From the sequence record NC_028992.1: 34,783 bases of DNA; one strand, given 5' to 3'. Shown piece after piece: positions 463 to 26,946 of the stretch. The first letter of the stretch is position 1. The number at the start of each line of letters is the position of its first letter. The notes beneath the pieces were generated by a model. The model saw nothing but the letters and a program-made list of their open reading frames with translations. It had not been told where the DNA came from and did not search any database. The translations under genes were made by a program, and so were the position numbers.

Positions 463-473
463 TTTATTTTTTA
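463..473 (+). promoter_or_regulatory. T-rich upstream element TTTATTTTTTA (may also terminate the capsid transcript)
   Basis: 23 nt before GTG 496. Confidence 0.55.
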
Positions 474-495
474 ATTTCCGTTCCTCCTTCTTCTC

Positions 496-765
496 GTGAA
501 CATTTACAAAGGGAGGAACAGTTGTTATTATAGGAAAGAGGACATTCTTGTTTCCCACGATTGGCAAATACCAGACATGATTATGAGGGATTTAAGGAGA
601 GGTTATACTTACGACCACGAGTGCAACGCCATCCCGATGAACGAAGACCTGGCAAAGGCTAGGCTAGCGTTCCTCATAAGGATAACGACTGACGAGTTAG
701 CCAGAGAGAAGGCTAGGAGATATTTGCAAGAATTAAAAGAGGGAGAACGTGTTTTGATTTATTAA
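496..765 (+). CDS. Hypothetical protein (89 aa)
   Basis: GTG start 23 nt after the conserved TTTATTTTTTA element. Confidence 0.65.
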   Translation: MNIYKGRNSCYYRKEDILVSHDWQIPDMIMRDLRRGYTYDHECNAIPMNEDLAKARLAFLIRITTDELAREKARRYLQELKEGERVLIY

Positions 766-786
766 CACGCTTTCGAACTCTTTCTT

Positions 787-1101
787 ATGTCTGAACAAGG
801 ACAAGGGCAAATATCAATCGTATCGATTATTGTAATGGCCCTATTCGCGATCTTCATCTTCTCTACGATATTGCAGGGCATATCTTTCATAATCAATCCC
901 GTAAAGGACTTGGTTGCTTCTTCACCATCTCCCCAAGTCGCGTGGACTTTGGCCATTTATCAGTATCTTTACGTGGTTTATAGCTACCTTCTGGCAGTGC
1001 TTACAAACCAGTACTCCGTCGCCGTGTTCATTGCTCTTGGCATCGTCGTGCTAGCACTGACCTATTACTGGTACTGGAGACAACAGACATACGGTGCTTA
1101 A
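787..1101 (+). CDS. Small membrane protein, possible minor virion protein
   Basis: 2-3 hydrophobic helices; downstream of the capsid gene. Confidence 0.7.
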   Translation: MSEQGQGQISIVSIIVMALFAIFIFSTILQGISFIINPVKDLVASSPSPQVAWTLAIYQYLYVVYSYLLAVLTNQYSVAVFIALGIVVLALTYYWYWRQQTYGA

Positions 1102-1490
1102 ATGAACAGGGTATACAAATAATCAAAAAACTTATATAGCCTAGATATATCGGTTTCGACTTCTTTAATGTTTTTCATTCTCTTTACAAAGTCACGAAAA
1201 TCATACGTGTTCATAAAATGATTTAAATCATTTAAGGTTATGTATTTCCTTTCCATAATTTCGTATTTGTCACCACGTCTTCGCAAGGTCAGCCTAGGTT
1301 TACTCCACTTCAGTACTGGAATGACCAATTCCTTATCGATTAGCTGAGGTTTCTGCAATTCAAAACATGTGTCACCTTTACATATCATAACATGGCCTTC
1401 ATCAACAGTAACTACTTCAATTAGCTTGGTGTTGTTCGACGCCCTATACGATATATCCTTCAGTGCTTTGTAAGCCTCTACTATACCCAT
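1098..1490 (-). CDS. Hypothetical protein (start revised to ATG 1490)
   Basis: ATG at 1490 is 24 nt below the TTTATTTATTA element, the same spacing as at other genes. Confidence 0.7.
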   Translation of the reverse strand: MGIVEAYKALKDISYRASNNTKLIEVVTVDEGHVMICKGDTCFELQKPQLIDKELVIPVLKWSKPRLTLRRRGDKYEIMERKYITLNDLNHFMNTYDFRDFVKRMKNIKEVETDISRLYKFFDYLYTLFI

Positions 1491-1513
1491 AAGAGTCAAC
1501 ACAGAAAGGGGGC

Positions 1514-1524
1514 TAATAAATAAA
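1514..1524 (-). promoter_or_regulatory. T-rich upstream element TTTATTTATTA
   Basis: 24 nt before ATG 1490. Confidence 0.55.
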
Positions 1525-1553
1525 ACCTAGCCAACCAAGCTTGTCGCCCATTA

Positions 1554-1988
1554 TCAGACTGACTCATCCCATATTACCTTGTAATCCTTCAGAACGCTCT
1601 TCGCAGCACTTATCAGTACATTATTTACAATATTCAGCACCTCTCTCTCCTGCTCATCGGTTCTTATGTGTTTACTTTTTATTCTATTCATTAGCGTTTT
1701 ACTATCTTTAAGTGCACCGATCAACTTCTCCTTCGCGTTCCACACATTGAATAATGGAATTGTATAATCATTGATATCGGAAAGCAAAATTCCAAGTGCC
1801 TTCGTGACGTATTTCACGAATTTATCATCAACGTCTTTCCCGTACCTCAAAAGTAGATCGAGCAACTCTCCTTTCAGGAACTCCCATATTTGGTCGTCGT
1901 TCCGCTCGCCACTGAGCTTCGCGGTCAACAACTGTATCAGTATCTCCTCGACGTAACTACGTCTGTGCTGCTGATATTGTAGGCTCAA
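1554..1988 (-). CDS. Hypothetical helical protein, possibly fusellovirus A154-like
   Basis: 144-aa helical ORF in an overlapping operon; family resemblance is from memory only. Confidence 0.55.
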   Translation of the reverse strand: MSLQYQQHRRSYVEEILIQLLTAKLSGERNDDQIWEFLKGELLDLLLRYGKDVDDKFVKYVTKALGILLSDINDYTIPLFNVWNAKEKLIGALKDSKTLMNRIKSKHIRTDEQEREVLNIVNNVLISAAKSVLKDYKVIWDESV

Positions 1989-2559
1989 ACAGCCTCACCG
2001 CATTCCTGTTAATGAGGAGAAGGAAATAGCTTAGGTTGTCTGTGACTTTTACGAAGAAATACATAGGTGGGATGAGCAAGGGTTTGGAGATGTTTACATC
2101 GAGATCGATGTTACTTGTCTCTAAAAGCGTGGAATCCGACTCTGGAAGAATCGTCTTCCTTTCGACTCTTTTCAGCGGTAAATACTTGTTTCTTAGTATG
2201 CCGAAGAAAAGGAACGGCTTGCCTATGAACTGTTTCGCCACAAATGCCCAGGTGAGCCTGTACAGGAAGTCGTCGTCGAGCCTCGAGGTTTTGGTCCTTT
2301 TCATTAACTTGTCTATATTCAGGCTAATGTCTTGAATAGGTAAAGTCAGATATGCGTACTGTCCATAGATCTTATCAACAACCTTAGGCTTCGGCGAGCT
2401 GAGCATTTTCGGAGAAATGTGTTTATCGATCCACCAAACTACGTTGCTCACCGTATAGACAGGCTTCTTCTTTTTTCTTGTTAGAAGTAGAGTAGCCGTT
2501 GTCGCTACTGCCGCTCCTCCACCTACCGCTATTATTACATTTGTCAATGTTGCTTCCAT
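1957..2559 (-). CDS. N-terminally membrane-anchored protein
   Basis: Hydrophobic N-terminus followed by RKKKK, then a soluble domain. Confidence 0.7.
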   Translation of the reverse strand: MEATLTNVIIAVGGGAAVATTATLLLTRKKKKPVYTVSNVVWWIDKHISPKMLSSPKPKVVDKIYGQYAYLTLPIQDISLNIDKLMKRTKTSRLDDDFLYRLTWAFVAKQFIGKPFLFFGILRNKYLPLKRVERKTILPESDSTLLETSNIDLDVNISKPLLIPPMYFFVKVTDNLSYFLLLINRNAVRLFEPTISAAQT

Positions 2560-3122
2560 AGATCATACCCTGTCAGAATCTGGTTGACCAGACGCGGTGC
2601 CTTATCTGCGGGCAAGTTCGTGTTTAAGAGGTTTGCCACCTCTATGCTTATGTTATCGACAGCAAGGAGGAAGCTGTTAACTAGATCTATAAGGTCTTTT
2701 ATTAGCTTCAGATCCTCCATAAGCTTCTCTGTGTCATCGATATCTTTGCTTATTTTGCTAATGGTTTGTGCATAGACTGTGTCTAGAATGACTATCATGT
2801 TTCTAATTACGTTCCTCACAGAGTTCTTGAACAGAGTGACTATGAGTGCAGGAACAGTGATGTAACGTATTTCTTGCTGGAGGTCTTCGAGCAACGTTGC
2901 TATAATGGCCGACTGGAGTTGCTTGAGTCTATTGATGTTGTTAATCACATCGTTATCTTTCAGCTCTTCAAGGAGGTTTATCTTCGACAACGGTTGCTTT
3001 ACTAGTCTCGAGAATCCGTGGTTCTCATCAAGGGAGAGGGGATTTACTTTTACTACTACGGTTTTCGCACTCGTCCCTCTAATCCCAGTTTGTTGTTGTG
3101 AATCCTGTTTTTGGTCACTCAT
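2544..3122 (-). CDS. Helical/coiled-coil hypothetical protein
   Basis: SD GAGGTGA 5 nt before ATG 3122; Leu/Ile heptad-rich. Confidence 0.7.
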   Translation of the reverse strand: MSDQKQDSQQQTGIRGTSAKTVVVKVNPLSLDENHGFSRLVKQPLSKINLLEELKDNDVINNINRLKQLQSAIIATLLEDLQQEIRYITVPALIVTLFKNSVRNVIRNMIVILDTVYAQTISKISKDIDDTEKLMEDLKLIKDLIDLVNSFLLAVDNISIEVANLLNTNLPADKAPRLVNQILTGYDLWKQH

Positions 3123-3127
3123 GTTTT

Positions 3128-3331
3128 TCACCTCTTCTTATTGTCCTTGTGGGGAGACCATCTTATATATACAAATTTGCTTTTCCTTCTACTAAAAACT
3201 TGGATCGTTGCATTATACGACTTTGCAAGCTCCCTAACTTCATCCACGTACTCCAGCGGTACCATTATGACGTTCTCCTTTTCTGGAGAAAATAAGGGGT
3301 TGTAAGCGGTAATTACGTCAAGAATATTCAC
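3128..3331 (-). CDS. Small hypothetical protein (start revised to GTG 3331)
   Basis: TTTTA element 24 nt upstream of GTG 3331; divergent from the zinc-finger gene. Confidence 0.5.
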   Translation of the reverse strand: MNILDVITAYNPLFSPEKENVIMVPLEYVDEVRELAKSYNATIQVFSRRKSKFVYIRWSPHKDNKKR

Positions 3332-3390
3332 AGATGTGCGTATTCCTACAATAATAAAAGTTTTAAGCCGAACTGTGAATTCATTATACA

Positions 3391-3606
3391 ATGAAGCAAC
3401 TTTATGCAGTTTCGAAATTCAATACGCTACTTGGCATGAGACAACTGATCATCAACGCTGAGAAAAATAACATAGACCTGTTCAAATCAATAAAGGAAAA
3501 GAGGTGCCCAGTGTGTGGAAAGAAGTTCTCAAAAACGTTTCTTTTAAAGAGGCACATCATTCATTCGGAATGTGCAACGGTTCTTGAAAGACGGTTAAGA
3601 GAATAA
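3391..3606 (+). CDS. C2H2 zinc-finger protein
   Basis: CPVCGKKFSKTFLLKRHIIH; such fingers are typical of crenarchaeal viruses. Confidence 0.85.
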   Translation: MKQLYAVSKFNTLLGMRQLIINAEKNNIDLFKSIKEKRCPVCGKKFSKTFLLKRHIIHSECATVLERRLRE

Positions 3607-3936
3607 GTCAATGAAATTCCCCTTTTTTGTAAATATTTTGATTATCAGTAGGAAACCCGACACTATCGTTATTACGAACCCTATTATGAAAAGGGGAGCA
3701 AAGGGATCAGGTTTGTAAACGGGCGTTATTATAACCGTCGAATTGTTTACCTTCGTTTCATTTTCGCCAGCAACGTATACCAGGCCGTTCAGGTAGGACG
3801 CGAAATTGAAGGCCACTAAAAAGATCGTAATGATGGCGTCAAGGTAAATCGGGGTGTCCTTGTTCAAGAGGTAGAGTTGTATTGCTAATGCTATGAAGTC
3901 AATCGAGAGCGTAAGGATCAATTCATCACCTAGCAT
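3595..3936 (-). CDS. Three-helix membrane glycoprotein
   Basis: Three hydrophobic segments; NET and NST sequons. Confidence 0.75.
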   Translation of the reverse strand: MLGDELILTLSIDFIALAIQLYLLNKDTPIYLDAIITIFLVAFNFASYLNGLVYVAGENETKVNNSTVIITPVYKPDPFAPLFIIGFVITIVSGFLLIIKIFTKKGNFIDLFS

Positions 3937-4255
3937 TCTCCGCCAGCCTCTTTAATTCGTCAATGTATATCGGTTTATTAAAAAATATCCTAGCGACAAT
4001 ATAAATTGCTGGTTGGTAGTTCTCCTTTTCAGCACAATGAAATAGTAATTTGGACACGCATATCTCCAACGTGCTATACCTTTTTCGGCATAACTTCACT
4101 ATCTCCTCATCGTCCTCGACGAAATACCTCAATTTCTTGGCTTGTACACCGTAGTAGCTGTAAAGCCCACTCTTCTTGTCGCTGAAATAATACACTTTGC
4201 TTTTCGCTTTCCTAATAATGTCATTTACGAATTTTTCACATATCTCACGACCCAT
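3926..4255 (-). CDS. Hypothetical protein
   Basis: 109-aa ORF overlapping both neighbours. Confidence 0.65.
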   Translation of the reverse strand: MGREICEKFVNDIIRKAKSKVYYFSDKKSGLYSYYGVQAKKLRYFVEDDEEIVKLCRKRYSTLEICVSKLLFHCAEKENYQPAIYIVARIFFNKPIYIDELKRLAENAR

Positions 4256-4952
4256 TTTCCACTACACCCCTCATATAGCCATTATGGACGTAAATGAACA
4301 AGATGTTACCGTAGAATGTGTAGGAGATATTGTATCCGATCACGGTCACGTTACTAACGTTCCCGAGAACTGGTTGGTAGAATAACGCACTGCCGTTCAC
4401 AACGACGCCGTTGTTGTAGTAAAGTTTCGTTCCTGGGACGAGCTCAATATACCAGCCCCAAGGTAACGTTTCGTTATACTTCCCGCTGTAGTACAATACG
4501 GAGAAGTTCGGGTTGACGATGGGAGGCCTCGTTATGTTTGGCGTCACATAAACTGGGGAGTTTACAAAGTTGTACCCTGAGTAGACCTGGACGTAGATCG
4601 GGGTAAAAGGCGGTATGAAGTAGAGGGGCGAGGGTGCAGAGATATTGATCAGGCGCCACGAGTGGGGTGGGATAACTGGCAGTGTGCAGTTGTACGGTGC
4701 ATAGGCCATAATTTGGCTTGAGACGACCCACCTTTTCTCGCTACCAAACATGCTAAGGAGGAAGACGGGATAAACTGGGGAGTTTCCGTAGTTTGTAACG
4801 TTCAAGCACACCACGTCCCAGTACCCCACATCACCAACATCATAGACCCTTACGATGTTCACCGTTAGCGGCAACGTTGGTCTCCACATTAATGATATCG
4901 TGAGTATTTCGAGTACAATGATACTAATTATTGCTAGTACTTTCCAGCTCAT
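4245..4952 (-). CDS. Membrane-anchored surface glycoprotein
   Basis: N-terminal signal/anchor; beta-rich Y/N/V/P composition; many N-x-S/T sequons; contains two copies of the 16-mer. Confidence 0.75.
   Translation of the reverse strand: MSWKVLAIISIIVLEILTISLMWRPTLPLTVNIVRVYDVGDVGYWDVVCLNVTNYGNSPVYPVFLLSMFGSEKRWVVSSQIMAYAPYNCTLPVIPPHSWRLINISAPSPLYFIPPFTPIYVQVYSGYNFVNSPVYVTPNITRPPIVNPNFSVLYYSGKYNETLPWGWYIELVPGTKLYYNNGVVVNGSALFYQPVLGNVSNVTVIGYNISYTFYGNILFIYVHNGYMRGVVENGS
4549..4564 (+). repeat. 16-mer site TAAACTGGGGAGTTTA (in CDS)
   Basis: Exact match. Confidence 0.9.
4771..4785 (+). repeat. 16-mer site, 15/16 (in CDS)
   Basis: TAAACTGGGGAGTTT. Confidence 0.85.
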
Positions 4953-5889
4953 AGCTACTCACCCAAATCGTGATATAGAATAAGAAATAGTCCAAATCCC
5001 TCCAACTCACGATCCAGATAAAAGCTGGAAGGAGCCACTTCCACTTAGTGGCAGGTTTGTACAGTATTAACAACGCGATGTATAGCGTCAGGAAAGCCAC
5101 AGTATATGCGATGTGCGGTATAGGCACTCCTATCATAGTCAAGAGGCTGACAGAAGCACCCTGATTCGCTATAGGTTGCGTGATAGGGCCCAATACGTCA
5201 AAGGCCCATTTCGGCGAGACGAAAGGTAAGTTCGGGATCAGAAAAACAACTAGTGGTANAATTACGTTTTTCACCAGTTCTTTCCATTTGCCCCAATAAT
5301 CCTTCCATATAAACGGTAAGTAAAGCAACGTATATTGTTTGATGTCACCGCTCAGTGCCATAAGTGCCGATCTTATCCAGCCTTTGGTCGTGAGTGCTAC
5401 GATTGCGATCGTTAAGGATATTATGTCAAATGACCCACCTGTAAAAGCCGAAAAACTTCCTAGAATCAGCATGATGATAAAGAACAGCTTCTCTTTACCC
5501 TTCCACCTCAGGAATAGGTAGAGCAAGAACGTCGTTGCAAGCGTNGCGATCTGAGGGTACACGACGGAGGCTATCTCGAAATACAACGCAGGGTAACCGA
5601 ACACGTTAACGTAATAGTTTGGGGTGAGGGTGGCAGTGACAACAGGTTCGGCTACNGGAAACATCTTGTAGGCGTCAATCAGGTTCACTGTATAGGGGTT
5701 GTTCCCGTGCCTGAAGAGGTAAGCCGCGTATAATACCAGGCTCTCCTCATCGGTCTGTGAAGGGACTCTATATATCGAGATAGCGATAAAAGTGGCAACA
5801 AACGTAAAGAACACGATTAAATCGGCATACTTCTTATTTTCTCTTACAAGATAAAGAAAAGCAAACACTATGCCCATTATATAAAGCAA
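4924..5889 (-). CDS. GT-C-fold polytopic glycosyltransferase (GT87/DUF2029-like); true start probably further upstream
   Basis: Luminal QTDEE...GNNPY motif, YPALY, KQY, ~9 TM helices; the frame stays open and hydrophobic up to ~5988. Confidence 0.7.
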   Translation of the reverse strand: MLYIMGIVFAFLYLVRENKKYADLIVFFTFVATFIAISIYRVPSQTDEESLVLYAAYLFRHGNNPYTVNLIDAYKMFXVAEPVVTATLTPNYYVNVFGYPALYFEIASVVYPQIXTLATTFLLYLFLRWKGKEKLFFIIMLILGSFSAFTGGSFDIISLTIAIVALTTKGWIRSALMALSGDIKQYTLLYLPFIWKDYWGKWKELVKNVIXPLVVFLIPNLPFVSPKWAFDVLGPITQPIANQGASVSLLTMIGVPIPHIAYTVAFLTLYIALLILYKPATKWKWLLPAFIWIVSWRDLDYFLFYITIWVSSYELESTSNN

Positions 5890-8024: not shown

Positions 8025-8055
8025 GAGAGAAAAATCGGATCAAATAAGAAAAATG

Positions 8056-8709: not shown

Positions 8710-8720
8710 TAAAAAATAAA
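8710..8720 (-). promoter_or_regulatory. T-rich upstream element TTTATTTTTTA
   Basis: 25 nt before ATG 8685. Confidence 0.6.
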
Positions 8721-12600: not shown

Positions 12601-12611
12601 TAAAAAATAAA
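12601..12611 (-). promoter_or_regulatory. T-rich upstream element TTTATTTTTTA
   Basis: 24 nt before ATG 12577. Confidence 0.6.
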
Positions 12612-13029: not shown

Positions 13030-13040
13030 TAAAAAATAAA
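13030..13040 (-). promoter_or_regulatory. T-rich upstream element TTTATTTTTTA
   Basis: 24 nt before ATG 13006. Confidence 0.6.
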
Positions 13041-13220: not shown

Positions 13221-13221
13221 G

Positions 13222-13920: not shown

Positions 13921-13997
13921 GAGAAGAATTCAGGCTTAACGCTTTAAAAATAGAAACTCTTCTTTTCCCAAAATGCGTTGAAGAAGAAAACGCTTTT

Positions 13998-14283: not shown

Positions 14284-17200
14284 TTATAGACGTATAACTT
14301 CGCCTGCCATTCCGCTTATTTCTAGGTTGTTTCCACCTCCTCCACCGAACCCACCTGGCATCGTCGAAGGTACTAGAGGAGGTGGTCCTATCAGTAGAGG
14401 CTCCTCACTAGAGGATTCTACATAATATAATGAAGAGATCAGTGGTGGCGGAGTATATTGTGGTGGTGGCGGAGTGTTGTTAGTAGGTGGTGGCGGAGTA
14501 TATTGTGGTGGTGGCGGAGTGTTGTTAGTAGGTGGTGGCGGAGTATATTCTGTAGTTGGCTCAGGTATTGGCTCAGTTATCCTCCCAGTTGGCTCAGGTA
14601 TTGGCTCAGTTATCCTCCCAGTTGGCTCAGGTATTGGCTCAGTTATCCTCCCAGTTGGCTCAGGTATTGGCTCAGTTATCCTCCCAGTTGGCTCAGGTAT
14701 TGGCTCAGTTATCCTCCCAGTTGGCTCAGGTATTGGCTCAGTTATCCTCCCAGTTGGCTCAGGTATTGGCTCAGTTATCCTCCCAGTTGGCTCAGGTATT
14801 GGCTCAGTTATCCTATATCCTCCGCTTTGTCCTGCTCCACCACTATTTTGTTGCTGATCCTCAAACAGGTTAGTAGGCTCGCCAGGAATGATTTCTGCAC
14901 CAACATATTTTAATCTATACCAATCTGACAAGATATCACGCAAAGGTCCAGGCAAGTTCCTAAGTAGTTCTGGCGTTTGTCTTACCCATATATTGTACAC
15001 TTCTCCAGTTCCTCTTAACTTAGCACCAGGAGCGAGTTCGATTTGCCTTTCGTGGCTAATCCCTAGTAGTCCCTCAGGGTCGATTACAGGTTTCCCAGTC
15101 TTAGCACTGTAGGTTAACACATCGTTTATGTACTCTCTAAACATGGGGCCATAATATGGGTCTTTGAGTACATCCTCCACGACGAGATTGTTCACCCATT
15201 TAGGATTTACCCCATTCGCCAAGTACTCCGCTTTCTTAGTAAGAATGTAGTCAACTAACTCCTTAGGAGGTTCAATTAGCTCAGCCTCTGTCTTTACACC
15301 TATTATACCTCCAGTGTCAAACGGATGAAGGAACCTGTACAGTGCTTCTCTTACACTTGATCTTCCTAGCCTAAACTCAGGTACGCCAGGCTTTGTATCT
15401 TTCAGTCCAGTGTAGGCGGTTAACGCTACTCCCTCGCTCTCGCCTTCGCCTGGCGATAAGTATAAACTCCTGAAATTCCCTGGTCCTCTCCACGCCCATT
15501 CACTTTCAGGTGATGGTGGTTTTGATGGCATTACGGGTACTTCTCCATTTTCAACCCCTTCAAGGAAACTACGTACTGGTGTTACATGGGTCGCTAAAGT
15601 AGTTCTACCTTCATATGCGTTTACAAACTCATTAATATCTCCTTCTCCAAATGTAGTTTTAGGCACTAAATGAATCGAATCACCACTAGGAAGTGTAATC
15701 TTCCAAGCCTCTGTAGTCTCGCCAGTAAGGGGAGAGGTTAACGTCTCTAGTTCCGCCACACCACCTGTTCCTCTTATCTCGTCTATCTTGCTCATCAACT
15801 TACCCGCTATACCAGGACCTAGTCCACCTGCCAAACCGCCTATGATTCCAGCGATAGCCAGTTGTTCAGGGTTCTGCGAGAAAGGTAATTGTGTTGCGAC
15901 ATTAGTTAATGCCCCACCAGTTGCTCTCCATAATGGCGTCAGGCCTGATACTTTCGATGCTAAGTCTTCACTTCCAGTCAGTAATTTCGTTAAAGCCCCT
16001 GCCCCTTTAGCTAAACCAGACTCTAATGCTAGACCACCAGCTTCGCCAAGAGCACTTAGCACGCCACCCTCATTGGCCTCCTGTAGCACTTCTGGTAGCG
16101 ATTGCCACTGGCCTGTGGTGAGCTTTGAGACTGCTTCACCGATGCCTACTGAGGCACCCTCTCCGATAAGCACGGCTGGTAAAAGCTCAGGTGCAACGAC
16201 CGCAGTAGCTATTGCTGGTAATGCGACTTCTGTAACATCACCTACAGCTCTAGCGATATTTTGTCCTCCAGCGGCATTAAATTGTGCAATTGCCTGGTTA
16301 AAATTCTCAAGGCCTTTGCCCTGTACAAGGTGGGCCAACTCCTCGCCTGCACCACCCAAATATTCGGTGCCATAGTATCCTACCAGTGCGGAAACGTCGG
16401 CGACATCGTTAAAGAATTGCTGGAACGGGTTAATATGTTGATTCTGGAGCTGTGCTATCCCTTGTTGTAATTGTTGCTGTGCCTGATTAAGCTGTGCTAT
16501 CCCTTGTTGTAATTGAGACCGGTCTTGTTCAAGTTGTACTAGATTTTGTGACGTTTTTTGTATATATTGCTGATTTTGTTGTATATACGCATTAACTTGG
16601 TTCAACTCTTGTTGTAGTTGTTGCTGTGCCTGCTCGTATTGTGCTAGATTTTGCTGATTTTGTTGTATATATTGCTGTAACTTTTGTAAGTAACTCTGTA
16701 ATTGTGGATTATTAGGGTTTTGCTGTAATAGTTGTTCGGCTTGTGCTTGATATTGTTGTGCTTGTTGTAAGTTCTGTTCTGTTTGTTGTATATACGCGTT
16801 AACCTGGCTCAACTCTTGCTGTAATTGTTGTTGTGCCTGATTGGCTTGTGCTTGATATTGTTGTGCTTGTTGTAAGTTCTGTTCTGTTTGTTGTATATAC
16901 GCGTTAACTTGATTCAATTGTTGCTGATATTTCTGTTTCTCTTGGTTGATTTGATTCAACTGTTGTTGTAGTTGTTTCTCTTGCTGTTGTGGGGTCTGTA
17001 TACCGTACGCCGAGGCGTACGCGTTCTGTATTGCGTTATTAGCCGCTGACAACGCATTAGATATTGCATTTCCAGCGGTGCTTAATGCCCCAGTTACGGC
17101 ACTCCCAGCCTCCTTTGCCACATTAATTTCTGTGTTCCAGACGTTTTCTATACCGCTAGTGAGTCCACTGAAGAACGAACCTAAGGGATTTCCCGACTGC

Positions 17201-18394: not shown

Positions 18395-18405
18395 TAAAAA
18401 ATAAA
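18395..18405 (-). promoter_or_regulatory. T-rich upstream element TTTATTTTTTA heading the giant-protein operon
   Basis: 24 nt before ATG 18371; no upstream gene on this strand to terminate. Confidence 0.65.
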
Positions 18406-19891: not shown

Positions 19892-20023
19892 ACTAATATA
19901 TAAAGCTTTTGCCTAATCAGTTGTTACAATTCCCCTTATCCCAAAACCTGACGTAACAGTTTATTGGTGGGGGCTAACCCCCTAGCAAACAAAGTGTTGC
20001 GTCAAAAACAGGGGCTGAAGGAA

Positions 20024-21960: not shown

Positions 21961-21973
21961 ACTCCCCAGTTTA
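21958..21973 (-). repeat. 16-mer site containing the gtrA stop
   Basis: TAAACTCCCCAGTTTA. Confidence 0.92.
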
Positions 21974-22340: not shown

Positions 22341-22343
22341 ACG

Positions 22344-22544
22344 ATGGATCATGAAAACAAGGACAAACCTGAGGAGAGTTTTAGGGAGACCAAGGATCAT
22401 ATGACGCCCGAGGAGATGATAGGTGCAATCGTTGCTTTCGTAATTGGTATTATCGGTTTAGCCATAATTTGCACCCTCCATGATATGGGACAGATTCAGC
22501 AAGTCCTCAACACTTCTATGGTGAAAATCCCTGGCTTCATCTAA
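22344..22544 (+). CDS. Small single-TM protein
   Basis: One hydrophobic helix; GGTGG SD. Confidence 0.6.
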   Translation: MDHENKDKPEESFRETKDHMTPEEMIGAIVAFVIGIIGLAIICTLHDMGQIQQVLNTSMVKIPGFI

Positions 22545-22554
22545 ATCCTAAATC

Positions 22555-23098
22555 CTAAAGAGTGACCTGGTTCCTTTCGACGAGGCAATTGATTTTTGAG
22601 AAATACAATCTTTCATTCTTAAAGACGCTGGCTAATGCCTTGTAGAGGTCGGCGAGTGAAAACCTGTAGTGCGGATATATCAGCTCAGCGTTGTAGTAGA
22701 TAGCACACTCGCCGAATTCATCCTTGAAAAACGAGGAAGGATGGGGACGTTGCCGAAACTGATTGCGACGTATATGTATCCGACGTTTATCCCCTCTCCA
22801 AATAGATGTACCAATTCCCATGATAAAGTGCGTCAGGATCCCTGACCACGTACGGTTTTTCTACAGGGGCAATCACGTTGTTCGGCCACCTCTTTAGAGC
22901 TTCTGTCCTTGCGTCCTCAGAAACGATAAAGCTGTTCCAGAACGTCTTCATGAGTACGTCGTATACTGGCGGAACGAACTCCTTCCCTTCTTTTTCAGCG
23001 ATTATTTTCGAGATGGCTACGTTCTGGGGCTGGCCGTTCTTGTAGGCGAACTTACCCTCGAGTATTTTTTCAATAACGTCCTTAAACATCAGCGTCAT
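22555..23098 (-). CDS. Hypothetical protein, apparently broken by two homopolymer indels
   Basis: Adding one G at 22791-22794 and one T at 22727-22731 joins ORF 22787-23098, an intervening frame (INVGYIYVAISFGNVPILP) and ORF 22555-22821. Confidence 0.5.
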
Positions 23099-23861
23099 CT
23101 TCCTCGAGCTCCCTGTATTTGTCGATCTTTTGCTCGATTATCCTCCTTCTCTTCTCCATCATATCGTTCCAGATCTCACTAGGCATCCTCGGGTTCTTGA
23201 TGTAAAAGAACATCTCTGGGATGTCGACTTCCTTTAGGGTTCCCGATCGGGTTGAGGCTACTTCCCTCCTGGTGAATATTACCTTCCCGTCCTTCTTTAC
23301 CTGTACTCTCCAAGACGCTATGTCCCGGAAGAACTTAGCCAGTCCTACAAGCCTCGGAACCGTGAAGATTATCAGGGATATGAAGTCCTTCACGTAGACG
23401 AAAGCGTCGAAGAGCTCGAGCATCTTCCTCTTCTCTGCAGCTCTCTTCATGTTCCACGTTGAGCTCAGCCCTATTGCGGAAGGGTCGTCGAAAAGCACGA
23501 CGTCGTAACGTTGTCCACTCTTGACGTTTTCTAGGAGTTGCTTGAAATCGTCGACGTCAAATACTATCCTTTTGCGTACCTCATTCATGTCCTCATAGAC
23601 ATAGAACATGGACTGGATGACGTAGCTAGTTTTACCGCTTCCTGGCGGACCGTAAACGATTATTTCATCATGAATTAGTCTATCATTTGTTTTGATTGCA
23701 CTGCTTATGAACCAGACAAGTGGATTGAATCGAAAATCGTTAGCTAGCTGTTTTAGAGCTTCCCATCCTTCTCCCCTAGTTTTCGGAACCATAATTTTGT
23801 GATAAATCGGAAGTAATATGCTATAATAGTTCTGATAATCTTCTAATCGCATCATAGCCAC
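23082..23861 (-). CDS. P-loop ATPase, fusellovirus B251-like
   Basis: GPPGSGKT, VVLFDD, then LIIFTVP..K..R...WRVQV, as recalled for the B251 family. Confidence 0.8.
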   Translation of the reverse strand: MAMMRLEDYQNYYSILLPIYHKIMVPKTRGEGWEALKQLANDFRFNPLVWFISSAIKTNDRLIHDEIIVYGPPGSGKTSYVIQSMFYVYEDMNEVRKRIVFDVDDFKQLLENVKSGQRYDVVLFDDPSAIGLSSTWNMKRAAEKRKMLELFDAFVYVKDFISLIIFTVPRLVGLAKFFRDIASWRVQVKKDGKVIFTRREVASTRSGTLKEVDIPEMFFYIKNPRMPSEIWNDMMEKRRRIIEQKIDKYRELEEDDADV

Positions 23862-24018
23862 CTAGACAGTCGACCAGTTTACTCTTTCTCCTTTCTCCTG
23901 TCTTCAAGAATTGTATAATGTGGTCGATCTCCTCTTCAGTGATTAAGCCTATGCATTCCTCCTTAATGTCGTCTACTAATATACGCTCTAATATCTTGTA
24001 TATTTTCTCCTCTTCCAT
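23821..24018 (-). CDS. Small hypothetical protein
   Basis: SD-preceded ORF in a tight operon. Confidence 0.6.
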   Translation of the reverse strand: MEEEKIYKILERILVDDIKEECIGLITEEEIDHIIQFLKTGERRKSKLVDCLGGYDAIRRLSELL

Positions 24019-24021
24019 TCC

Positions 24022-24303
24022 TCATCCACCCCTGTTAGTAGTATTTTTCTCATTTTGCTTATTTTCCTTGTTGACGCGAGATTCGACCAGCTTCGTTATC
24101 CTCATTATCTTTATTACTACGAGAAGGAACACTATACTACTTATTGTAAGCGACGCGAAATCGTTGTACAAATAGGAGAGAACGGCCATGGCCATCGCCA
24201 TAACCGCAAACAAAATTTCGAAACGAACAATGGGAAAGTATCGCTTTTCTACGATAATATAGACGATCAAGAGTATTGCGGAAACGAAATCGAATATCAC
24301 CAT
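24022..24303 (-). CDS. Three-TM small membrane protein
   Basis: Hydrophobic helices with a polar C-terminal tail. Confidence 0.7.
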   Translation of the reverse strand: MVIFDFVSAILLIVYIIVEKRYFPIVRFEILFAVMAMAMAVLSYLYNDFASLTISSIVFLLVVIKIMRITKLVESRVNKENKQNEKNTTNRGG

Positions 24304-24668
24304 ACATTGACACCGAGATTCGGATATACGACACTCTCAGTTACCGCGATTTCACTGAGTATATCAATCAGTAATTTCGTTGTCCTTTCCATGTAGTCGT
24401 CGATGCTTTCCCCTTCCTTCCTTTCTAGCTCCCTCATTATTTCATTCAATCCCTTCCCTATCTTCCTGGTGATGTAGTCCGTCTTGTCCATGTGTGCTAG
24501 CAGGGATTTCGTTGCACTCACAGTGGCAAGGAATGCAGCTTTCCGTTGCGGGAACGGTATGCTGAAATTGTTTACCTCGTGGATTATCTTGTTTAGTAAA
24601 TGAGTTGCGAACTCCCTGTAGGATCTTAAAGGAGTTAGCTCAATGCCTGCATTCATTCCAGCTGACAT
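24297..24668 (-). CDS. Hypothetical helical protein
   Basis: Overlaps neighbours in the operon. Confidence 0.65.
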   Translation of the reverse strand: MSAGMNAGIELTPLRSYREFATHLLNKIIHEVNNFSIPFPQRKAAFLATVSATKSLLAHMDKTDYITRKIGKGLNEIMRELERKEGESIDDYMERTTKLLIDILSEIAVTESVVYPNLGVNVW

Positions 24669-25039
24669 TCCTGATTCCCCTTCACAGAGAGTAGGTATAC
24701 GTTACCGTTCTTCCCTTTCATCATTTTGATGCAATTTAGCTGGCTGAGGATAGACCTTATCCTTTGCTTAGTTTCAGGCAGGAGTGCGTCGCTCATTTTG
24801 GTGTATAAAACTAGGTCGTCCTCGTCATAGACAACGTCGAAATCGTAAGGTGTGAGGACTACTGGGGGAGAAACTACACGTTTGGCCTTTACGCCTTTCA
24901 GTAGTGCTAGGGACAATAGGGAATGAACTTGGCCGTAGAGAACTACTGCGTTCTTGTGGACTTCGTACTGCTTAAGGAAATTGAACAGCTTGGTTGGTGT
25001 GTACTGTGCCTTCAGCAAAACCATGTACTTCTTTATCAT
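24653..25039 (-). CDS. Hypothetical protein
   Basis: ATGA overlap with the upstream gene. Confidence 0.65.
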   Translation of the reverse strand: MIKKYMVLLKAQYTPTKLFNFLKQYEVHKNAVVLYGQVHSLLSLALLKGVKAKRVVSPPVVLTPYDFDVVYDEDDLVLYTKMSDALLPETKQRIRSILSQLNCIKMMKGKNGNVYLLSVKGNQECQLE

Positions 25040-25383
25040 TTTATCATATCCTCCAGTAATTTCTCAACGAGCTCGTTGCTTTTCGCAGGAATAATGGCAC
25101 CGTGTGTATCGTTATCGTCAAGCTTATTCACGAAGTAGTATTTTATTTTAGGCGTCCTGGACCAGAATAGCCTGAATAGATCGGTAGCGGGTGGCAGTAC
25201 TTCTACTACTTCGTAATTGCCGTAGCTTATTATTCTCATGTGAAGTCCTCCTATGCTACAAACGAATTCTTGCCAGACTGGTAGCGACGTGTTCACTGGA
25301 AATATTATTATTTGTGCTTTTCTTATTTCATCTAAGAATTCCTCTTTCGACTTTGCCTCGGTCTTGTTTAGGAACTTGACCAT
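25036..25383 (-). CDS. Hypothetical protein (start revised to ATG 25383)
   Basis: TTTTTCTTAT element at the same spacing as at 8024 and 26895. Confidence 0.6.
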   Translation of the reverse strand: MVKFLNKTEAKSKEEFLDEIRKAQIIIFPVNTSLPVWQEFVCSIGGLHMRIISYGNYEVVEVLPPATDLFRLFWSRTPKIKYYFVNKLDDNDTHGAIIPAKSNELVEKLLEDMIK

Positions 25384-25423
25384 ATGAAGGAAAAAGAATT
25401 GGGATAAGAAAAATGTTGAACCC

Positions 25424-25795
25424 TCAGGGTGAGGGGACAAGGTCGTATTGTTTGCCCTCATTCCTGAATATTATCATTTTTTTCTCTAAATCAAGGTACG
25501 GTGTGTACCCTTTCAAAAGAGGAAATACCTGCTTAGGTATATGGATGTAGTGGGCATTGTACTCTTTTCCTGCGACTTTCCGCTTTAACACGAGCCACCT
25601 TAGCTGTAGTGTCCTTTCTTGCTCAATTTTCTCATCGCTCTTCCTGAATATTATTACTCTATTCTCTAAATCAAGATATGGTGTGTATTCCTTTAAAAAT
25701 AATGCTATTTGTGAAGGTATTAGAACGTAGTGCATAACAAACACTTCCCCTCCCTTTTTTTGCTTTTTCACAACCCATCTTAATTCTTGCTCCAT
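25424..25795 (-). CDS. Tandem-duplicated AbrB/swapped-hairpin-like DNA-binding protein
   Basis: Two ~48-aa repeats LRW...HY.xIP.Q....LK.YTPYLDLE...IIFR; ATG 25795 is 25 nt below TTTTTTA. Confidence 0.55.
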   Translation of the reverse strand: MEQELRWVVKKQKKGGEVFVMHYVLIPSQIALFLKEYTPYLDLENRVIIFRKSDEKIEQERTLQLRWLVLKRKVAGKEYNAHYIHIPKQVFPLLKGYTPYLDLEKKMIIFRNEGKQYDLVPSP

Positions 25796-25885
25796 CAATA
25801 TTAGGTTCAACCAGTTAGTTAAAAAATTTACTCATCAGTTTACCCACTGAAAGAACAACCCGTATATCAAAATTATGACGAGGGT

Positions 25886-26293
25886 TTATCTCGTGAAAAA
25901 CCTGTGCTCGGCCAGCCACAGCAACAACCTGTGTAGCAATACCACTATTATCAGGGATAACATTGCGGCGATTAGGAACGCCATAGCATAGTATATCCAG
26001 ACATCGTTTTCTGACGGTACTACCACCACATCGTAGTACCCTGGCTGTACAGTTGTGGAGTTCACGTACACGCTCCCGTTTACCTCTAGGACTCCTCCTC
26101 CGTTTATGCTCAGCGTTGTGTAAGGACCTGAGGGGTAGTAATAGTAAGTCCCTGATGGCGTGAAGTTGTACATGCCAGGCTGGAAGTACATATTGAAGGT
26201 GTAGTAAGTCCTGGCGATAGACGCAGTTATCACCGATGATATGGCGAGGGTCAGAACGACGAAGACTATCGCGTAAAACACGGCCTCTTTCAT
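25886..26293 (-). CDS. Two-TM glycoprotein, same architecture as 13444-13920
   Basis: TM - beta-rich loop (VNGS, PGYY) - TM. Confidence 0.7.
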   Translation of the reverse strand: MKEAVFYAIVFVVLTLAISSVITASIARTYYTFNMYFQPGMYNFTPSGTYYYYPSGPYTTLSINGGGVLEVNGSVYVNSTTVQPGYYDVVVVPSENDVWIYYAMAFLIAAMLSLIIVVLLHRLLLWLAEHRFFTR

Positions 26294-26895
26294 TTCACCA
26301 CCGCGAAGGTGAAGGAGGAGGACTCTATGCTTTCTCCCAATATCACGATGTCCCTTTCCTCGGGAGCGAATACCCTGATTATATTATCGTCGAAGACTAC
26401 CTTTTTGATCTCCCTAGATGGAGGGAAAGGCAGAGCGTAGAAGAACGGCATTGTGCCCGCGTTGATTAGCAGAAGCGCATACATGTAGTCTTCATACGGG
26501 GTTCTGTTGCTACGGTTGAGGAGGATTAAGAGGTCGTTGTTGCTTTCGAAGTAGTCGGGTTTTCTAATCTTAGTCTTGGCCACCTCTAAGTCCTTCTTCT
26601 TCCTAATGTCCTGCAGGTAGACGAAAGGTTTCGTCGTCTCTTCAACGACGTACGTATATCTGAAGTACTCGTCTTCGATTTCGACAACGTTGCTTTCGAC
26701 CTTTGAGGACAGTGGAATGGAAAAGGTCGGCCTGAATCGGAACGCTGGGGCATCATACTGCTCTCTAATTGCAGCCAAAGCGAGGAACGTGTCAGCTGGT
26801 CTGTGCTCTGTTTTCTTCAGCAACCTGAGGTAATCAGAGACGGTATTGACTTTCACGTTGTACATGACCTCCAAATAGGACAGTATTGTGCCCAT
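26290..26895 (-). CDS. Hypothetical protein
   Basis: 201-aa ORF with upstream TTTTTCTTAT. Confidence 0.7.
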   Translation of the reverse strand: MGTILSYLEVMYNVKVNTVSDYLRLLKKTEHRPADTFLALAAIREQYDAPAFRFRPTFSIPLSSKVESNVVEIEDEYFRYTYVVEETTKPFVYLQDIRKKKDLEVAKTKIRKPDYFESNNDLLILLNRSNRTPYEDYMYALLLINAGTMPFFYALPFPPSREIKKVVFDDNIIRVFAPEERDIVILGESIESSSFTFAVVK

Positions 26896-26946
26896 AAGAG
26901 TAGGGTGAATTCGAATAAGAAAAACTTGGAACCGATTAAGAGGGGA

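What the first reader, a model, noticed from the sequence alone, without database searches (positions are those of the whole stretch)
463..26924. Conserved non-canonical T-rich promoter-like element at fixed spacing before start codons
Seen: exact TTTATTTTTTA at 463(+), 8710, 12601, 13030 and 18395(-), with its last A 23, 25, 24, 24 and 24 nt before the start codon. Variants at 1514, 13408, 13945 and 25820 are 24-25 nt away. A second form, TTTTTCTTAT, lies at 8044, 25404 and 26915, with its T5 run at the same position. The exact form has no purine-rich BRE and is often followed by GCCC. Known: Sulfolobales mRNAs are often leaderless with TATA near -26, and their terminators are U-rich. Inference: a virus-specific, probably late, promoter class that may double as a terminator; the 18395 copy has no upstream gene to terminate. 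Regulatory genes use canonical TTTAAA/TTTATA boxes (31414, 33806, 19897).
Basis: partly seen in the sequence, partly recalled or inferred. Interest (0 to 1): 0.72.

Follow-up and report, generated by a model that had tools for sequence, protein, structure and literature searches.

The report
T-rich promoter cassette of an archaeal virus
An uncultivated hot-spring archaeal virus puts the same T-rich, TATA-like box at a fixed distance in front of its virion-module genes; this is most likely a lineage-specific core promoter for leaderless mRNAs, a variant of the ordinary archaeal promoter and not a new kind of signal.

Summary
The window is the complete 34,783-bp genome of Sulfolobales virus YNP2 (SYV2). 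In detail: TTTATTTTTTA occurs 5 times (0.17 expected), each time on the sense strand with its last A 23-25 nt before a start codon, and all listed variants and TTTTTCTTAT copies are where stated.

The box is exactly conserved in YNP1 and in related hot-spring contigs. Its distance to the start codon is fixed (22 nt in 67 of 86 metagenomic copies), even before a gene whose protein is only about 50% identical. Box genes never have a Shine-Dalgarno sequence, whereas 29 of the other 49 genes do.

Best reading: a BRE-poor, T-rich TATA variant (ATTTTTTA at -31..-24, the register of the genome's canonical leaderless TTTAAAT box) followed by a pyrimidine-rich spacer. It drives leaderless transcription of the virion module. 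Its T6 run probably also stops upstream transcription.

"Non-canonical" and "virus-specific" are only partly right. SMV2 and Acidianus loci use short T-rich boxes; only the extended cassette is lineage-specific. GCCC is strain-specific. "Late" timing, the terminator role and dependence on the viral TFB2-like factor remain untested. This is a new variant of a known kind.

The parts
463..473 (+). T-box TTTATTTTTTA; promoter of gp02 (true start GTG 496)
752..765 (+). T-box variant TTTTGATTTATTAA (contains the gp02 stop codon); 21 nt before ATG 787, the likely true start of gp03
1514..1524 (-). T-box variant TTTATTTATTA; promoter of gp04 (ATG 1490)
   Evidence: box kept before orthologues that are only ~50% identical
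8044..8053 (-). Second form TTTTTCTTAT; 2 nt after the gp17 stop and 19 nt before ATG 8024 (extended gp16)
8710..8720 (-). T-box; promoter of gp17 (ATG 8685); 5 nt after the gp18 stop
12601..12611 (-). T-box; promoter of gp20, an HAD/PNK-type phosphatase (ATG 12577); 5 nt after the gp21 stop
13030..13040 (-). T-box; promoter of gp21, a membrane protein (ATG 13006); directly follows the gp22 stop TAA
13408..13418 (-). Variant TATATTTTTTA; promoter of gp23 (ATG 13383); this variant is itself conserved in 4 orthologous sites
13945..13955 (-). Variant TTCTATTTTTA; promoter of gp24 (GTG 13920); orthologues have TTTTATTTTTAAG
18395..18405 (-). T-box; promoter of the gp27-gp26-gp25 unit (ATG 18371); no co-directional gene upstream
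25404..25413 (-). Second form TTTTTCTTAT; before gp42 (ATG 25383); 10 nt after the gp43 stop
25820..25830 (-). TAAATTTTTTA before gp43 (ATG 25795); orthologues have AAAAAC+TTTTTAAG, closer to the canonical class
26915..26924 (-). Second form TTTTTCTTAT; before gp45 (ATG 26895); conserved in 5 of 5 orthologous sites
34741..34757 (+). T-rich box TTTTATTATATTTTTAA before gp01, a virion structural protein (start at 1; circular genome)
31412..31428 (-). Contrast class: canonical CAAAAAC + TTTAAATATA promoter of the gp53-gp48 operon, which contains the viral TFB gene
19894..19911 (-). Contrast class: canonical CAAAAGC + TTTATATATTA promoter of gp29
33799..33812 (+). Contrast class: GATAAGA + TTTAAAT, ending 25 nt before in-frame GTG 33837 (likely true start of gp59); used to calibrate the TATA register
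29607..30629 (-). gp50, a virus-encoded TFB2-like transcription factor; candidate but unproven reader of the T-box

Best explanation
The T-box is the core promoter of a set of short transcription units in the conserved virion/morphogenesis half of the genome of SYV-type viruses (YNP2, YNP1 and relatives).

Its 8-mer ATTTTTTA lies at -31..-24 from the start codon. That is where a TATA box must sit if transcription starts at or within a few nucleotides of the AUG, giving a leaderless mRNA. TBP binds this T-rich TATA variant.

The BRE position upstream is filled by TTT and variable sequence, so TFB contact there is weak. The 22-24 nt between box and AUG are pyrimidine-rich (consensus R-CT-N4-CTCCTA-N-TTCTTCTT in relatives) and carry no ribosome-binding site.

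TTTTTCTTAT is a weaker form in the same register. Because the box holds a T6 run and usually lies 0-40 nt behind the stop codon of a co-directional gene, it probably also acts as an oligo-T termination signal. One element would then close one unit and open the next.

Shown: the occurrence, the fixed phase, the conservation, the exclusivity with Shine-Dalgarno sequences, and the two promoter classes. Inferred: TBP binding, the position of the transcription start, termination, and weak-BRE-therefore-delayed expression.
For: - Counts and phase in the window.
- Exact conservation in YNP1 at the orthologous sites.
- In 6 IMG/VR relatives found through gp21, 22 of 23 exact copies lie 22-24 nt before an ORF start, counted last A to start codon; across these and both YNP genomes the figure is 32 of 33.
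- An unbiased extraction of upstream regions by protein homology finds the box before all distinct orthologous sites of gp20 (9), gp21 (8) and gp27 (6). It is also present, exact or 1-2 nt off, before gp02 (7) and before gp04 (7), although gp04 proteins are only 49-54% identical.
- In metagenomes, 78 of 86 copies of the extended cassette have a start codon 20-23 nt downstream (67 at 22 nt), before five gene families.
- A weight matrix trained without YNP2 ranks the 5 exact sites and the gp01 promoter as the top distinct sites in YNP2; the top three sites score 24.6-33.5, above every shuffle (highest 19.1), and gp17 (21.2) also exceeds it, while gp01 (18.9) and gp20 (16.9) fall just under that maximum.
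- 0 of 11 box genes have a Shine-Dalgarno sequence, against 29 of 49 other genes (Fisher p = 3.5e-4). The spacer is 75% pyrimidine against 37.5% (p = 5e-8).
- Register: the canonical TTTAAAT box of gp59 ends 25 nt before its GTG, the same slot.
- Literature: archaeal promoter boxes lie about 22-26 nt from leaderless gene starts (PMC6028130). The core promoter is BRE + TTTAWATR + an A/T-rich proximal element (bioRxiv 10.1101/2025.11.20.689296).
- Termination: T6 runs alone mark the convergent ends of gp09, gp29 and gp56. The SSV1 terminator consensus is TTTTTYT (PMC9608457).
Against: - No transcript 5' or 3' ends exist for this uncultivated virus, so the start site, TBP binding and termination are all inferred.
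- The box fits TTTAWATR at only 5-6 of 8 positions and lacks a conserved BRE. It might therefore need an extra factor.
- The related genomes are not independent samples, and the structural module is highly conserved (gp21 94-98% identical). Part of the conservation is shared ancestry.
- No significant hairpin precedes the box in YNP2 (z about 0).
- The gp27 copy has no gene to terminate, so termination cannot be the selected function everywhere.
Confidence: 0.72

Rival explanations
1. The element is a promoter, but it is read by the virus's own TFB2-like factor (gp50) and not by host TFB1. This would be a factor-switch cascade. Host TFB1 transcribes the canonical BRE/TATA operon gp53-gp48, which contains gp50; gp50 then directs RNA polymerase to the BRE-poor T-boxes of the virion module.
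For: - gp50 is a genuine TFB (Pfam TFIIB 1.6e-27; matches PDB TFIIB/TFB). It keeps B-reader and B-linker motifs close to those of host TFB2.
- All four complete or near-complete genomes with the T-box encode it.
- It lies behind a canonical promoter.
- Its BRE-recognition helix is variable (ISELVLRMRY, ISETIIRHRY, ISxVTIRNSY) where cellular TFBs are nearly invariant (ITEVTIRNRY). That fits promoters without a BRE.
- Host TFB2 has its own regulon and promoter architecture.
Against: - The four genomes are one lineage, so co-occurrence counts as a single event.
- Other mobile elements encode the same kind of TFB and show no T-box cassette in the about 15-20 kb examined.
- The recognition helix varies while the T-box stays invariant, so there is no sign of co-evolution.
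- All four N-terminal zinc-ribbon cysteines, in the domain that recruits polymerase, are lost. An N-terminally truncated TFB2 is a dominant-negative blocker of cell division in S. acidocaldarius. That suggests host cell-cycle control as an alternative role.
- The gar1-tfb2 promoters of Acidianus do not resemble the T-box.
Confidence: 0.15
2. The element is only an oligo-T transcription terminator, or a 3'-end signal, for the upstream gene. Its distance to the next start codon is incidental to tight gene packing.
For: - Four of 5 exact copies lie 0-36 nt after a co-directional stop codon.
- T-runs are the archaeal termination signal.
- The single exact copy in SMV2 lies 17 nt after a stop at a convergent junction, with no gene behind it.
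Against: - The distance to the upstream stop varies from 0 to about 60 nt, and GC-rich inserts are tolerated there, while the distance to the downstream start is fixed at 22-24 nt.
- TTTA and the final A are invariant, which a T-run terminator would not require.
- The gp27 copy has no upstream gene in YNP2.
- The downstream genes lack a ribosome-binding site and so need their own 5' end.
- Convergent gene ends use plain T6 runs and not the box.
Confidence: 0.05
3. The conserved 35-nt cassette is the binding site of a virus-encoded regulator, or a U-rich translation element on a polycistronic mRNA, and not a basal promoter.
For: - The spacer (CTCCTA-N-TTCTTCTT) is conserved beyond what a generic promoter needs. 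S. acidocaldarius promoters are unconserved between the TATA box and the proximal element.
- The genome encodes several small DNA-binding proteins.
Against: - The spacer consensus is weak in YNP2 itself (3 of 6 copies) while the box is exact.
- The box sits exactly in the TATA register.
- Internal genes of this genome use strong GGTGA-type ribosome-binding sites, so SD-independent internal initiation is not the norm here.
- A regulator site could coexist with the promoter; it need not replace it.
Confidence: 0.06

Closest known systems
Archaeal (Sulfolobales) core promoter for leaderless mRNAs: BRE + TATA box (TTTAWATR) + A/T-rich proximal element
   Same: An AT-only 8-mer in the slot that ends about 24 nt before the start codon. 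It sits before first genes of units that lack a Shine-Dalgarno sequence. The region from -12 to -1 is A/T-rich (here T-rich). The register is the same as the genome's own canonical leaderless TTTAAAT box.
   Different: The 3' half of the box is T where the consensus has A (5-6 of 8 matches). There is no conserved purine-rich BRE, and TTT fills that position. The spacer is strongly pyrimidine-biased and partly conserved. An 11-nt string is invariant across paralogous promoters and across genomes.
Short T-rich boxes (S)TTTTT(T)AA(S) before structural genes of Sulfolobus monocaudavirus SMV2 (Bicaudaviridae), and similar boxes in Acidianus chromosomal loci
   Same: The T5-6 + A core is the same and ends 23-26 nt before leaderless starts. 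SMV2 shows the same two-class layout: T-rich boxes in the structural module, and GGCAGAAAGCTTAAATATC-type boxes on early or anti-defence genes (PMC11065993).
   Different: SMV2 boxes are short and flanked by G/C or purines, and several precede leaders with a Shine-Dalgarno sequence. They lack the TTTA prefix and the CTCCTA...TTCTTCTT spacer.
SSV1 terminator consensus TTTTTYT and the termination-initiation linkage of Reiter, Palm and Zillig 1988 (title and consensus as cited in PMC9608457)
   Same: TTTTTCT(TAT) matches TTTTTYT exactly. The T-rich elements sit between tandem units, just after a stop codon and just before the next unit.
   Different: In SSV1 the 3' ends were mapped; here nothing is mapped. 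The SYV element has a fixed phase to the next start codon, and flanking bases that a terminator does not need are invariant.
Virus-specific promoter additions in rudiviruses (GTC motif downstream of the TATA box in SIRV1/2, Kessler 2004, cited in PMC5569661) and the conserved early-gene regulatory consensus of archaeal viruses (PMC11065993)
   Same: A lineage-specific conserved sequence surrounds an otherwise ordinary core promoter and is repeated many times within one genome.
   Different: Those elements accompany a strong canonical BRE/TATA. The SYV cassette is BRE-poor and marks the structural genes and not the early ones.
Phage late promoters read by a phage-encoded initiation factor (for example T4 late promoters TATAAATA with gp55); functional analogy only
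   Same: A single extended AT-rich box lacks the upstream recognition element of the host's standard promoter. The box is confined to morphogenesis genes, and the genome encodes its own paralogue of the host initiation factor.
   Different: The machinery is different (sigma versus TFB), and there is no evidence that gp50 reads the box.

Membership tests
Archaeal TATA-box core promoter (leaderless type) | AT-rich 8-bp box centred about 26-27 nt upstream of the transcription start, which is about 22-26 nt from the start codon of a leaderless gene | tested here: met
   ATTTTTTA lies at -31..-24 from the start codon in all 5 exact copies, and 22-23 nt from the start in 74 of 86 metagenomic copies. 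The register matches the canonical gp59 box. Distance norm from PMC6028130.
Archaeal TATA-box core promoter (leaderless type) | Sequence fits the TATA consensus TTTAWATR | tested here: inconclusive
   TTTATTTT matches 6 of 8 positions and ATTTTTTA 5 of 8, counted by eye against the consensus quoted. T-rich boxes of the same core occur in SMV2 and Acidianus loci.
Archaeal TATA-box core promoter (leaderless type) | Purine-rich BRE immediately upstream of the TATA box | tested here: not met
   There are on average 2.9 purines in the 6 nt before the box. 58% of 120 distinct contexts have no RNWAAW-type hexamer in any nearby register. The canonical promoters of the same genome have CAAAAAC, CAAAAGC and GAAAAGAC.
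Archaeal TATA-box core promoter (leaderless type) | The downstream gene lacks a Shine-Dalgarno sequence and is the first gene of a unit | tested here: met
   0 of 11 box genes have a Shine-Dalgarno sequence, against 29 of 49 others. Every box gene has an upstream gap of at least 34 nt by the annotated or corrected starts used; gp03, added later by a start correction, has a 21-nt gap.
Archaeal TATA-box core promoter (leaderless type) | Primary transcript 5' end at the predicted position; TBP/TFB binding | not testable with these tools
   No transcript or binding data exist for this uncultivated virus.
Archaeal oligo-T intrinsic terminator | Run of at least 5 T on the non-template strand shortly after a co-directional stop codon | tested here: met
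   A T6 run lies 4-40 nt after the stops of gp01, gp18, gp21 and gp22, and a T5 run 2-35 nt after those of gp17, gp43 and gp46. The gp27 copy is the exception, with no upstream gene.
Archaeal oligo-T intrinsic terminator | Mapped transcript 3' ends within or just after the T run | not testable with these tools
   No Term-seq or 3'-end data exist.
Bacterial-type intrinsic terminator (GC hairpin + T run) | Stable GC-rich hairpin directly abutting the T run | tested here: not met
   No terminator-like site coincides with a box (11 found against 16.2 expected). Fold z-scores of the 45 nt before each YNP2 box range from -0.6 to +0.5. In the three relative contexts folded, two show hairpins with negative z-scores (z = -2.5 and -1.6; the third is -0.5), and they lie 10-25 nt away from the T run.
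Promoter class dependent on a virus-encoded TFB | The box co-occurs with the viral TFB gene across independent lineages | tested here: inconclusive
   It is present in all 4 complete or near-complete T-box genomes, but these are one lineage. TFB-bearing elements L043-L048 show no cassette in the stretches held.
Promoter class dependent on a virus-encoded TFB | Factor-dependent initiation in vitro or in vivo | not testable with these tools
   This needs biochemistry.

The most novel reading that the evidence does not exclude
The T-box would be the recognition element of a transcription-factor switch in an archaeal virus. A virus-encoded TFB2 paralogue has lost its N-terminal zinc-ribbon cysteines, gained a C-terminal zinc ribbon and has a degenerate BRE-recognition helix. 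It is made from a canonical early promoter and redirects host RNA polymerase to BRE-less T-rich promoters of the virion genes. That would be the archaeal counterpart of phage sigma-factor cascades.
Probability: 0.15. Interest if true: 0.85.

Novelty: new variant of a known kind. Interest (0 to 1): 0.5.

Why it matters
Archaeal viruses are thought to depend wholly on host TBP and TFB. How they order gene expression in time is known only through a few repressors.

This genome shows a clean split. A few canonical, BRE-strong promoters sit on the regulatory half. On the virion half sits an invariant BRE-poor T-rich cassette, conserved across a hot-spring virus lineage that is abundant in metagenomes.

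That has three practical uses:
- It gives a rule for calling gene starts and transcription units in these viruses. It corrects at least four annotated starts here.
- It provides a defined pair of promoter types for in vitro transcription with Sulfolobus factors.
- It yields a testable question about what the virus-encoded TFB2 paralogue does: promoter switching, or interference with the host's TFB2-driven division programme.

Tried and rejected
- The bacterial sigma-70 promoter and hairpin-terminator scans were uninformative: 42 sites against 40.8 expected, and 11 against 16.2.
- Hairpin before the box in YNP2: not significant.
- The extended cassette in one genome for each of 185,579 bacterial and archaeal species gave only 3 chance bacterial hits. 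There was no provirus and no host promoter.
- A search for the T-box near other TFB-encoding elements (L043-L048) found none at a fixed spacing.
- The Acidianus gar1-tfb2 promoters, which host TFB2 binds according to the preprint, do not resemble the T-box.
- GCCC as part of the motif was rejected as strain-specific.
- gp43's box as a member was doubted, because its orthologues have a BRE-like AAAAAC + TTTTTAAG.
- Literature searches for the motif string and for viral TFB function found nothing on this element. The paper that first described SYV1/2 (Gudbergsdottir et al. 2016) and Reiter et al. 1988 are not held.
- PHROGs gave a function only for gp01 (virion structural protein). The other box genes belong to lineage-only families.

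Full report
**Identity of the window.** The 34,783 bases are 100% identical to the complete circular genome of Sulfolobales virus YNP2 (SYV2; KP282680 / NC_028992). This is a metagenome-assembled virus from Yellowstone with 60 annotated genes. Its nearest relative in GenBank is Sulfolobales virus YNP1 (NC_029027). The two share a syntenic first half, roughly genes 1-27. gp01 belongs to a PHROG of virion structural proteins. The half from about 0 to 18.4 kb is therefore the virion/morphogenesis module.

**Check of the observation.**
- TTTATTTTTTA occurs 5 times against 0.17 expected, and TTTTTCTTAT 3 times against 0.27 expected, at the stated coordinates and strands.
- I read every context. The last A lies 23, 25, 24, 24 and 24 nt before GTG 496, ATG 8685, ATG 12577, ATG 13006 and ATG 18371.
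- The four variants lie 24-25 nt before ATG 1490, ATG 13383, GTG 13920 and ATG 25795.
- The two forms are in register: ATTTTT begins at -31 in both.
- The chance that 5 of 5 copies fall in a 3-nt slot before one of 60 genes on the right strand is about 1e-13.
- A blind 6-mer scan of the -42..-18 windows of all genes ranks TTTTTA, TTTATT and ATTTTT first, in 11 of 60 genes against 0.7-0.8 expected. This is therefore the dominant upstream signal of the genome and not a minor class.

- The 463 copy serves the unannotated GTG 496. All orthologues start there, mostly with ATG.
- The 8044 copy serves ATG 8024.
- GCCC follows 4 of 6 copies in this strain only.

**Conservation.**
- YNP1 has 5 exact copies at the orthologous promoters, and also has the TTTTTCTTAT sites.
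- Six further IMG/VR contigs were found through the gp21 protein. In them, 22 of 23 exact copies lie 22-24 nt before orthologues of gp27, gp21, gp20, gp17 or gp24, counted last A to start codon. One of these (L006 5088) precedes an ATG followed 3 codons later by a stop, so the ORF-length check missed it. The single real exception is a duplicated box that flanks an inserted GC-rich hairpin element.
- To avoid circularity I extracted upstream regions by protein homology alone.
  - The exact box precedes all distinct orthologous sites of gp20 (9), gp21 (8) and gp27 (6).
  - It precedes gp02 (6 of 7 exact) and gp04 (4 of 7 exact, the rest 1-2 nt off), although gp04 proteins are only 49-54% identical.
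  - gp23 orthologues keep their own variant, TATATTTTTTAAT (4 of 4).
  - gp24 orthologues keep TTTTATTTTTAAG (4 of 5; YNP2 itself has TTCTATTTTTA).
  - gp45 orthologues keep TTTTTCTTAT (5 of 5).
- In relatives the spacer is also conserved: TTTATTTTTTA-R-CT-N4-CTCCTA-N-TTCTTCTT-ATG.
- This extended cassette finds 86 copies on 74 metagenomic stretches. Of these, 78 have a start codon 20-23 nt downstream (67 at exactly 22 nt), before only five gene families.
- In IMG/VR it separates related contigs, which always have a start codon at +22/23, from chance hits in unrelated phages, which never do.
- It is absent from one genome for each of 185,579 bacterial and archaeal species, apart from 3 chance bacterial hits.
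- A weight matrix trained only on relatives puts the five exact YNP2 sites and the gp01 promoter at the top of a scan of YNP2. The best three sites score 24.6-33.5 and gp17 scores 21.2, all above the highest shuffle score of 19.1; gp01 (18.9) and gp20 (16.9) fall just below that maximum but well above the shuffle mean of 10.3. The scan also points to a missed member before ATG 787, the extended gp03.

**What it is.** Three lines of evidence make a core promoter for leaderless mRNAs the best reading.

1. *Geometry.* In archaea with leaderless transcription the promoter box lies about 22-26 nt from the gene start (PMC6028130). Within this genome, the canonical GATAAGA-TTTAAAT promoter of gp59 ends 25 nt before an in-frame GTG at 33837. 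The canonical TATA 8-mer and the T-box 8-mer ATTTTTTA therefore occupy the same slot, -31..-24.

2. *Translation signals.* Internal genes of this genome carry clear GGTGA or GAGG ribosome-binding sites at -8..-14 (gp07, gp25, gp26, gp38, gp50 and others). None of the 11 box genes has one, against 29 of the other 49 genes (Fisher p = 3.5e-4). Their spacers are 75% pyrimidine against 37.5% (p = 5e-8). A gene with no ribosome-binding site needs its AUG at the 5' end of the mRNA, and so needs its own start site there.

3. *Asymmetry.* The distance to the downstream start is fixed. The distance to the upstream stop codon varies from 0 to about 60 nt and tolerates insertions.

**How far it is from the canonical promoter.**
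- The archaeal core promoter is a purine-rich BRE, a TATA box TTTAWATR and an A/T-rich proximal element at -12..-1. Little is conserved between the TATA box and the proximal element (bioRxiv 10.1101/2025.11.20.689296).
- The T-box fits the TATA consensus at 5-6 of 8 positions.
- Its BRE slot holds TTT preceded by variable sequence. On average there are 2.9 purines in the 6 nt before the box. 58% of 120 distinct family contexts have no hexamer of the RNWAAW type (the consensus as I recall it from Bell and Jackson's work). 42% do, mostly GCTAAT or AGTAAT, and some of these include the upstream stop codon.
- The same genome's canonical promoters have CAAAAAC, CAAAAGC or GAAAAGAC before TTTAAA or TTTATA.
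- A T-rich TATA core is not peculiar to this virus. In SMV2 (Bicaudaviridae) the most enriched upstream 6-mers are TTTTAA and TTTTTA. Its structural genes carry (S)TTTTT(T)AA(S) boxes, while its early genes carry GGCAGAAAGCTTAAATATC. The latter is the early or anti-defence class described in PMC11065993, which also lists SYV1.
- Acidianus chromosomal loci show a mix of TTTAAA, TTTATA and TTTTTTAA boxes.
- What is lineage-specific is therefore the invariant 11-mer, the T-filled BRE slot and the pyrimidine spacer, and not the use of a T-rich box as such.

**Two promoter classes.** The canonical BRE/TATA promoters (gp29, gp53, gp58, gp59) all lie in the 19-34 kb half, which holds the integrase, replication, methylase and regulator genes. 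The T-box and its variants lie before gp01, gp02, gp03, gp04, gp17, gp20, gp21, gp23, gp24 and gp27, in the virion half. TTTTTCTTAT lies before gp16, gp42 and gp45. Strong BREs raise promoter strength, and in other archaeal viruses they mark early genes. A BRE-poor class on structural genes is therefore consistent with delayed expression. This is inference; no timing data exist.

**Terminator role.**
- The box contains T6. Plain T6 runs mark the convergent ends of gp09, gp29 and gp56.
- The SSV1 terminator consensus TTTTTYT (PMC9608457) is matched exactly by TTTTTCT in the second form.
- Four of 5 exact copies, and all 3 copies of the second form, follow a co-directional stop codon within 0-36 nt.
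- A double role as terminator and promoter is thus plausible.
- It cannot be the primary constraint, for three reasons. TTTA and the last A are invariant. The gp27 copy has no upstream gene in YNP2. The phase is kept to the start codon and not to the stop.
- There is no bacterial-type hairpin in YNP2. Of three relative contexts folded, two carry GC-rich palindromes (z = -2.5 and -1.6) and the third does not stand out (z = -0.5). The palindromes lie 10-25 nt upstream and may add insulation.
- The single exact copy in SMV2 lies 17 nt after a stop at a convergent junction, with no gene behind it. This shows that the string can stand at a pure 3' end, though one copy is within chance there.

**The viral TFB.**
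- gp50 is a true TFB, with two TFIIB repeats and a TFIIB-type ribbon. It matches the PDB entries for TFIIB/TFB.
- Its closest cellular relatives are the 290-295-aa TFB2 proteins of Acidianus, Saccharolobus and Sulfolobus, at 51-59% identity.
- In a maximum-likelihood tree, 28 of the 29 proteins scored as carrying the C-terminal extension fall in one group inside Sulfolobales TFB2, next to Acidianus sp. HS-5. That group also holds two proteins of similar length scored without the double CxxC motif. One extended protein groups with Saccharolobus instead.
- Every extended protein has lost both N-terminal CxxC pairs of the zinc ribbon and has gained a C-terminal extension of about 55 aa with CxxC...CxxC. 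The B-reader and B-linker motifs are kept.
- The BRE-recognition helix, almost invariant in cellular TFBs (ITEVTIRNRYKE), differs among the T-box genomes: ISELVLRMRYKE, ISETIIRHRYKE and ISxVTIRNSYKE.
- All four complete or near-complete T-box genomes encode it, and it lies in the operon behind the canonical gp53 promoter.
- This fits a factor-switch model. However, the four genomes are one lineage. Other elements with the same TFB show no cassette in the DNA held. The helix does not co-vary with the invariant box.
- A 2026 preprint shows that host TFB2 drives the division-phase regulon through a distinct BRE-TATA spacing, and that an N-terminally truncated TFB2 is a dominant-negative that blocks division. 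This offers a rival role for gp50.
- I put the factor-switch reading at about 0.15.

**Verdict.** The element is a promoter at a fixed spacing and belongs to a two-class layout. 'Non-canonical' and 'virus-specific' apply only to the extended cassette, GCCC is not part of it, and timing, termination and TFB dependence remain to be tested. The element is a new, lineage-specific variant of the archaeal TATA-type promoter. Nothing on it was found in the searchable literature, and the paper that first described the two viruses is not held.

Noticed in passing
window 4549, 4771, 18439(-), 19358, 20024, 21958(-), 26947, 30642(-), 31471, 31832(-), 31875, 32266, 32695, 32750, 34677: A dispersed 16-nt palindrome, TAAACTGGGGAGTTTA (arms TAAACT/AGTTTA around GGGG), gives 16 hits with up to 3 mismatches against 0.45 expected. 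Seven of 15 convincing copies lie within 33 nt of a gene's 3' end, and several lie 60-100 nt upstream of promoters of both classes. The copies cluster in the 31.4-32.8 kb non-coding stretch and also occur in relatives. It may be an operator of a dimeric viral regulator or a 3'-end hairpin.
   Followed up: partly
window 29607-30629 (-), gp50: A virus-encoded TFB2 paralogue. All four N-terminal zinc-ribbon cysteines are lost, a C-terminal CxxC...CxxC extension of about 55 aa is gained, and the BRE-recognition helix is degenerate. In the tree, 28 of the 29 proteins with this architecture fall in one group inside Sulfolobales TFB2, and they are spread over several kinds of mobile element. An N-terminally truncated host TFB2 was recently shown to be a dominant-negative blocker of cell division, so this protein may be a cell-cycle hijacker.
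   Followed up: partly
window 496, 787, 8024, 33837, 34254: Likely mis-annotated starts. gp02 should start at GTG 496 (annotated 577), gp03 at ATG 787 (annotated 835), gp16 at ATG 8024 (annotated 7910) and gp59 at GTG 33837 (annotated TTG 33813). gp60 may start at GTG 34254, since both gp59 and gp60 would then begin GTGAGCCAGG.
   Followed up: partly
L007 1055-1134 versus L010 7706-7716: In one relative a 58-nt GC-rich double-hairpin element (GTGGGGGATACCCCCAC...GGGGGATACCCCC...CCCCCAATGCTAA) sits between two copies of the T-box. A sister contig has a single box and no insert. Similar GC-rich units precede many boxes in relatives. This may be a small mobile or recombining insulator unit that targets or carries the box.
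   Followed up: partly
window 14442-14880 and 16448-17000, inside gp26: Coding tandem repeats occur in the 1,285-aa protein: nine 33-nt units, 21/24-nt units, and 42-nt and about 105-nt units. The RefSeq name 'deacetylase AcuC' looks unfounded for this repeat-rich, probably structural protein.
   Followed up: no
window 25618-25712 and 27831-27925: A 95-nt direct repeat, 97% identical, lies 2.2 kb apart. One copy is inside gp43 and the other spans the gp47 3' end and its downstream flank. A third copy, 63% identical, lies at 25438-25532.
   Followed up: no
L056 (SMV2, NC_029020) whole locus: SMV2 shows the same two-class promoter layout. Short T-rich boxes precede structural genes, including both major head protein genes. 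A repeated GGCAGAAAGCTTAAATATC-type promoter precedes small early genes.
   Followed up: partly
window, 31 positions (for example 31874, 32244-32261): The record contains 31 ambiguous bases (N), concentrated in the 31.8-32.3 kb non-coding region. YNP1 has more, including inside its TFB gene.
   Followed up: no
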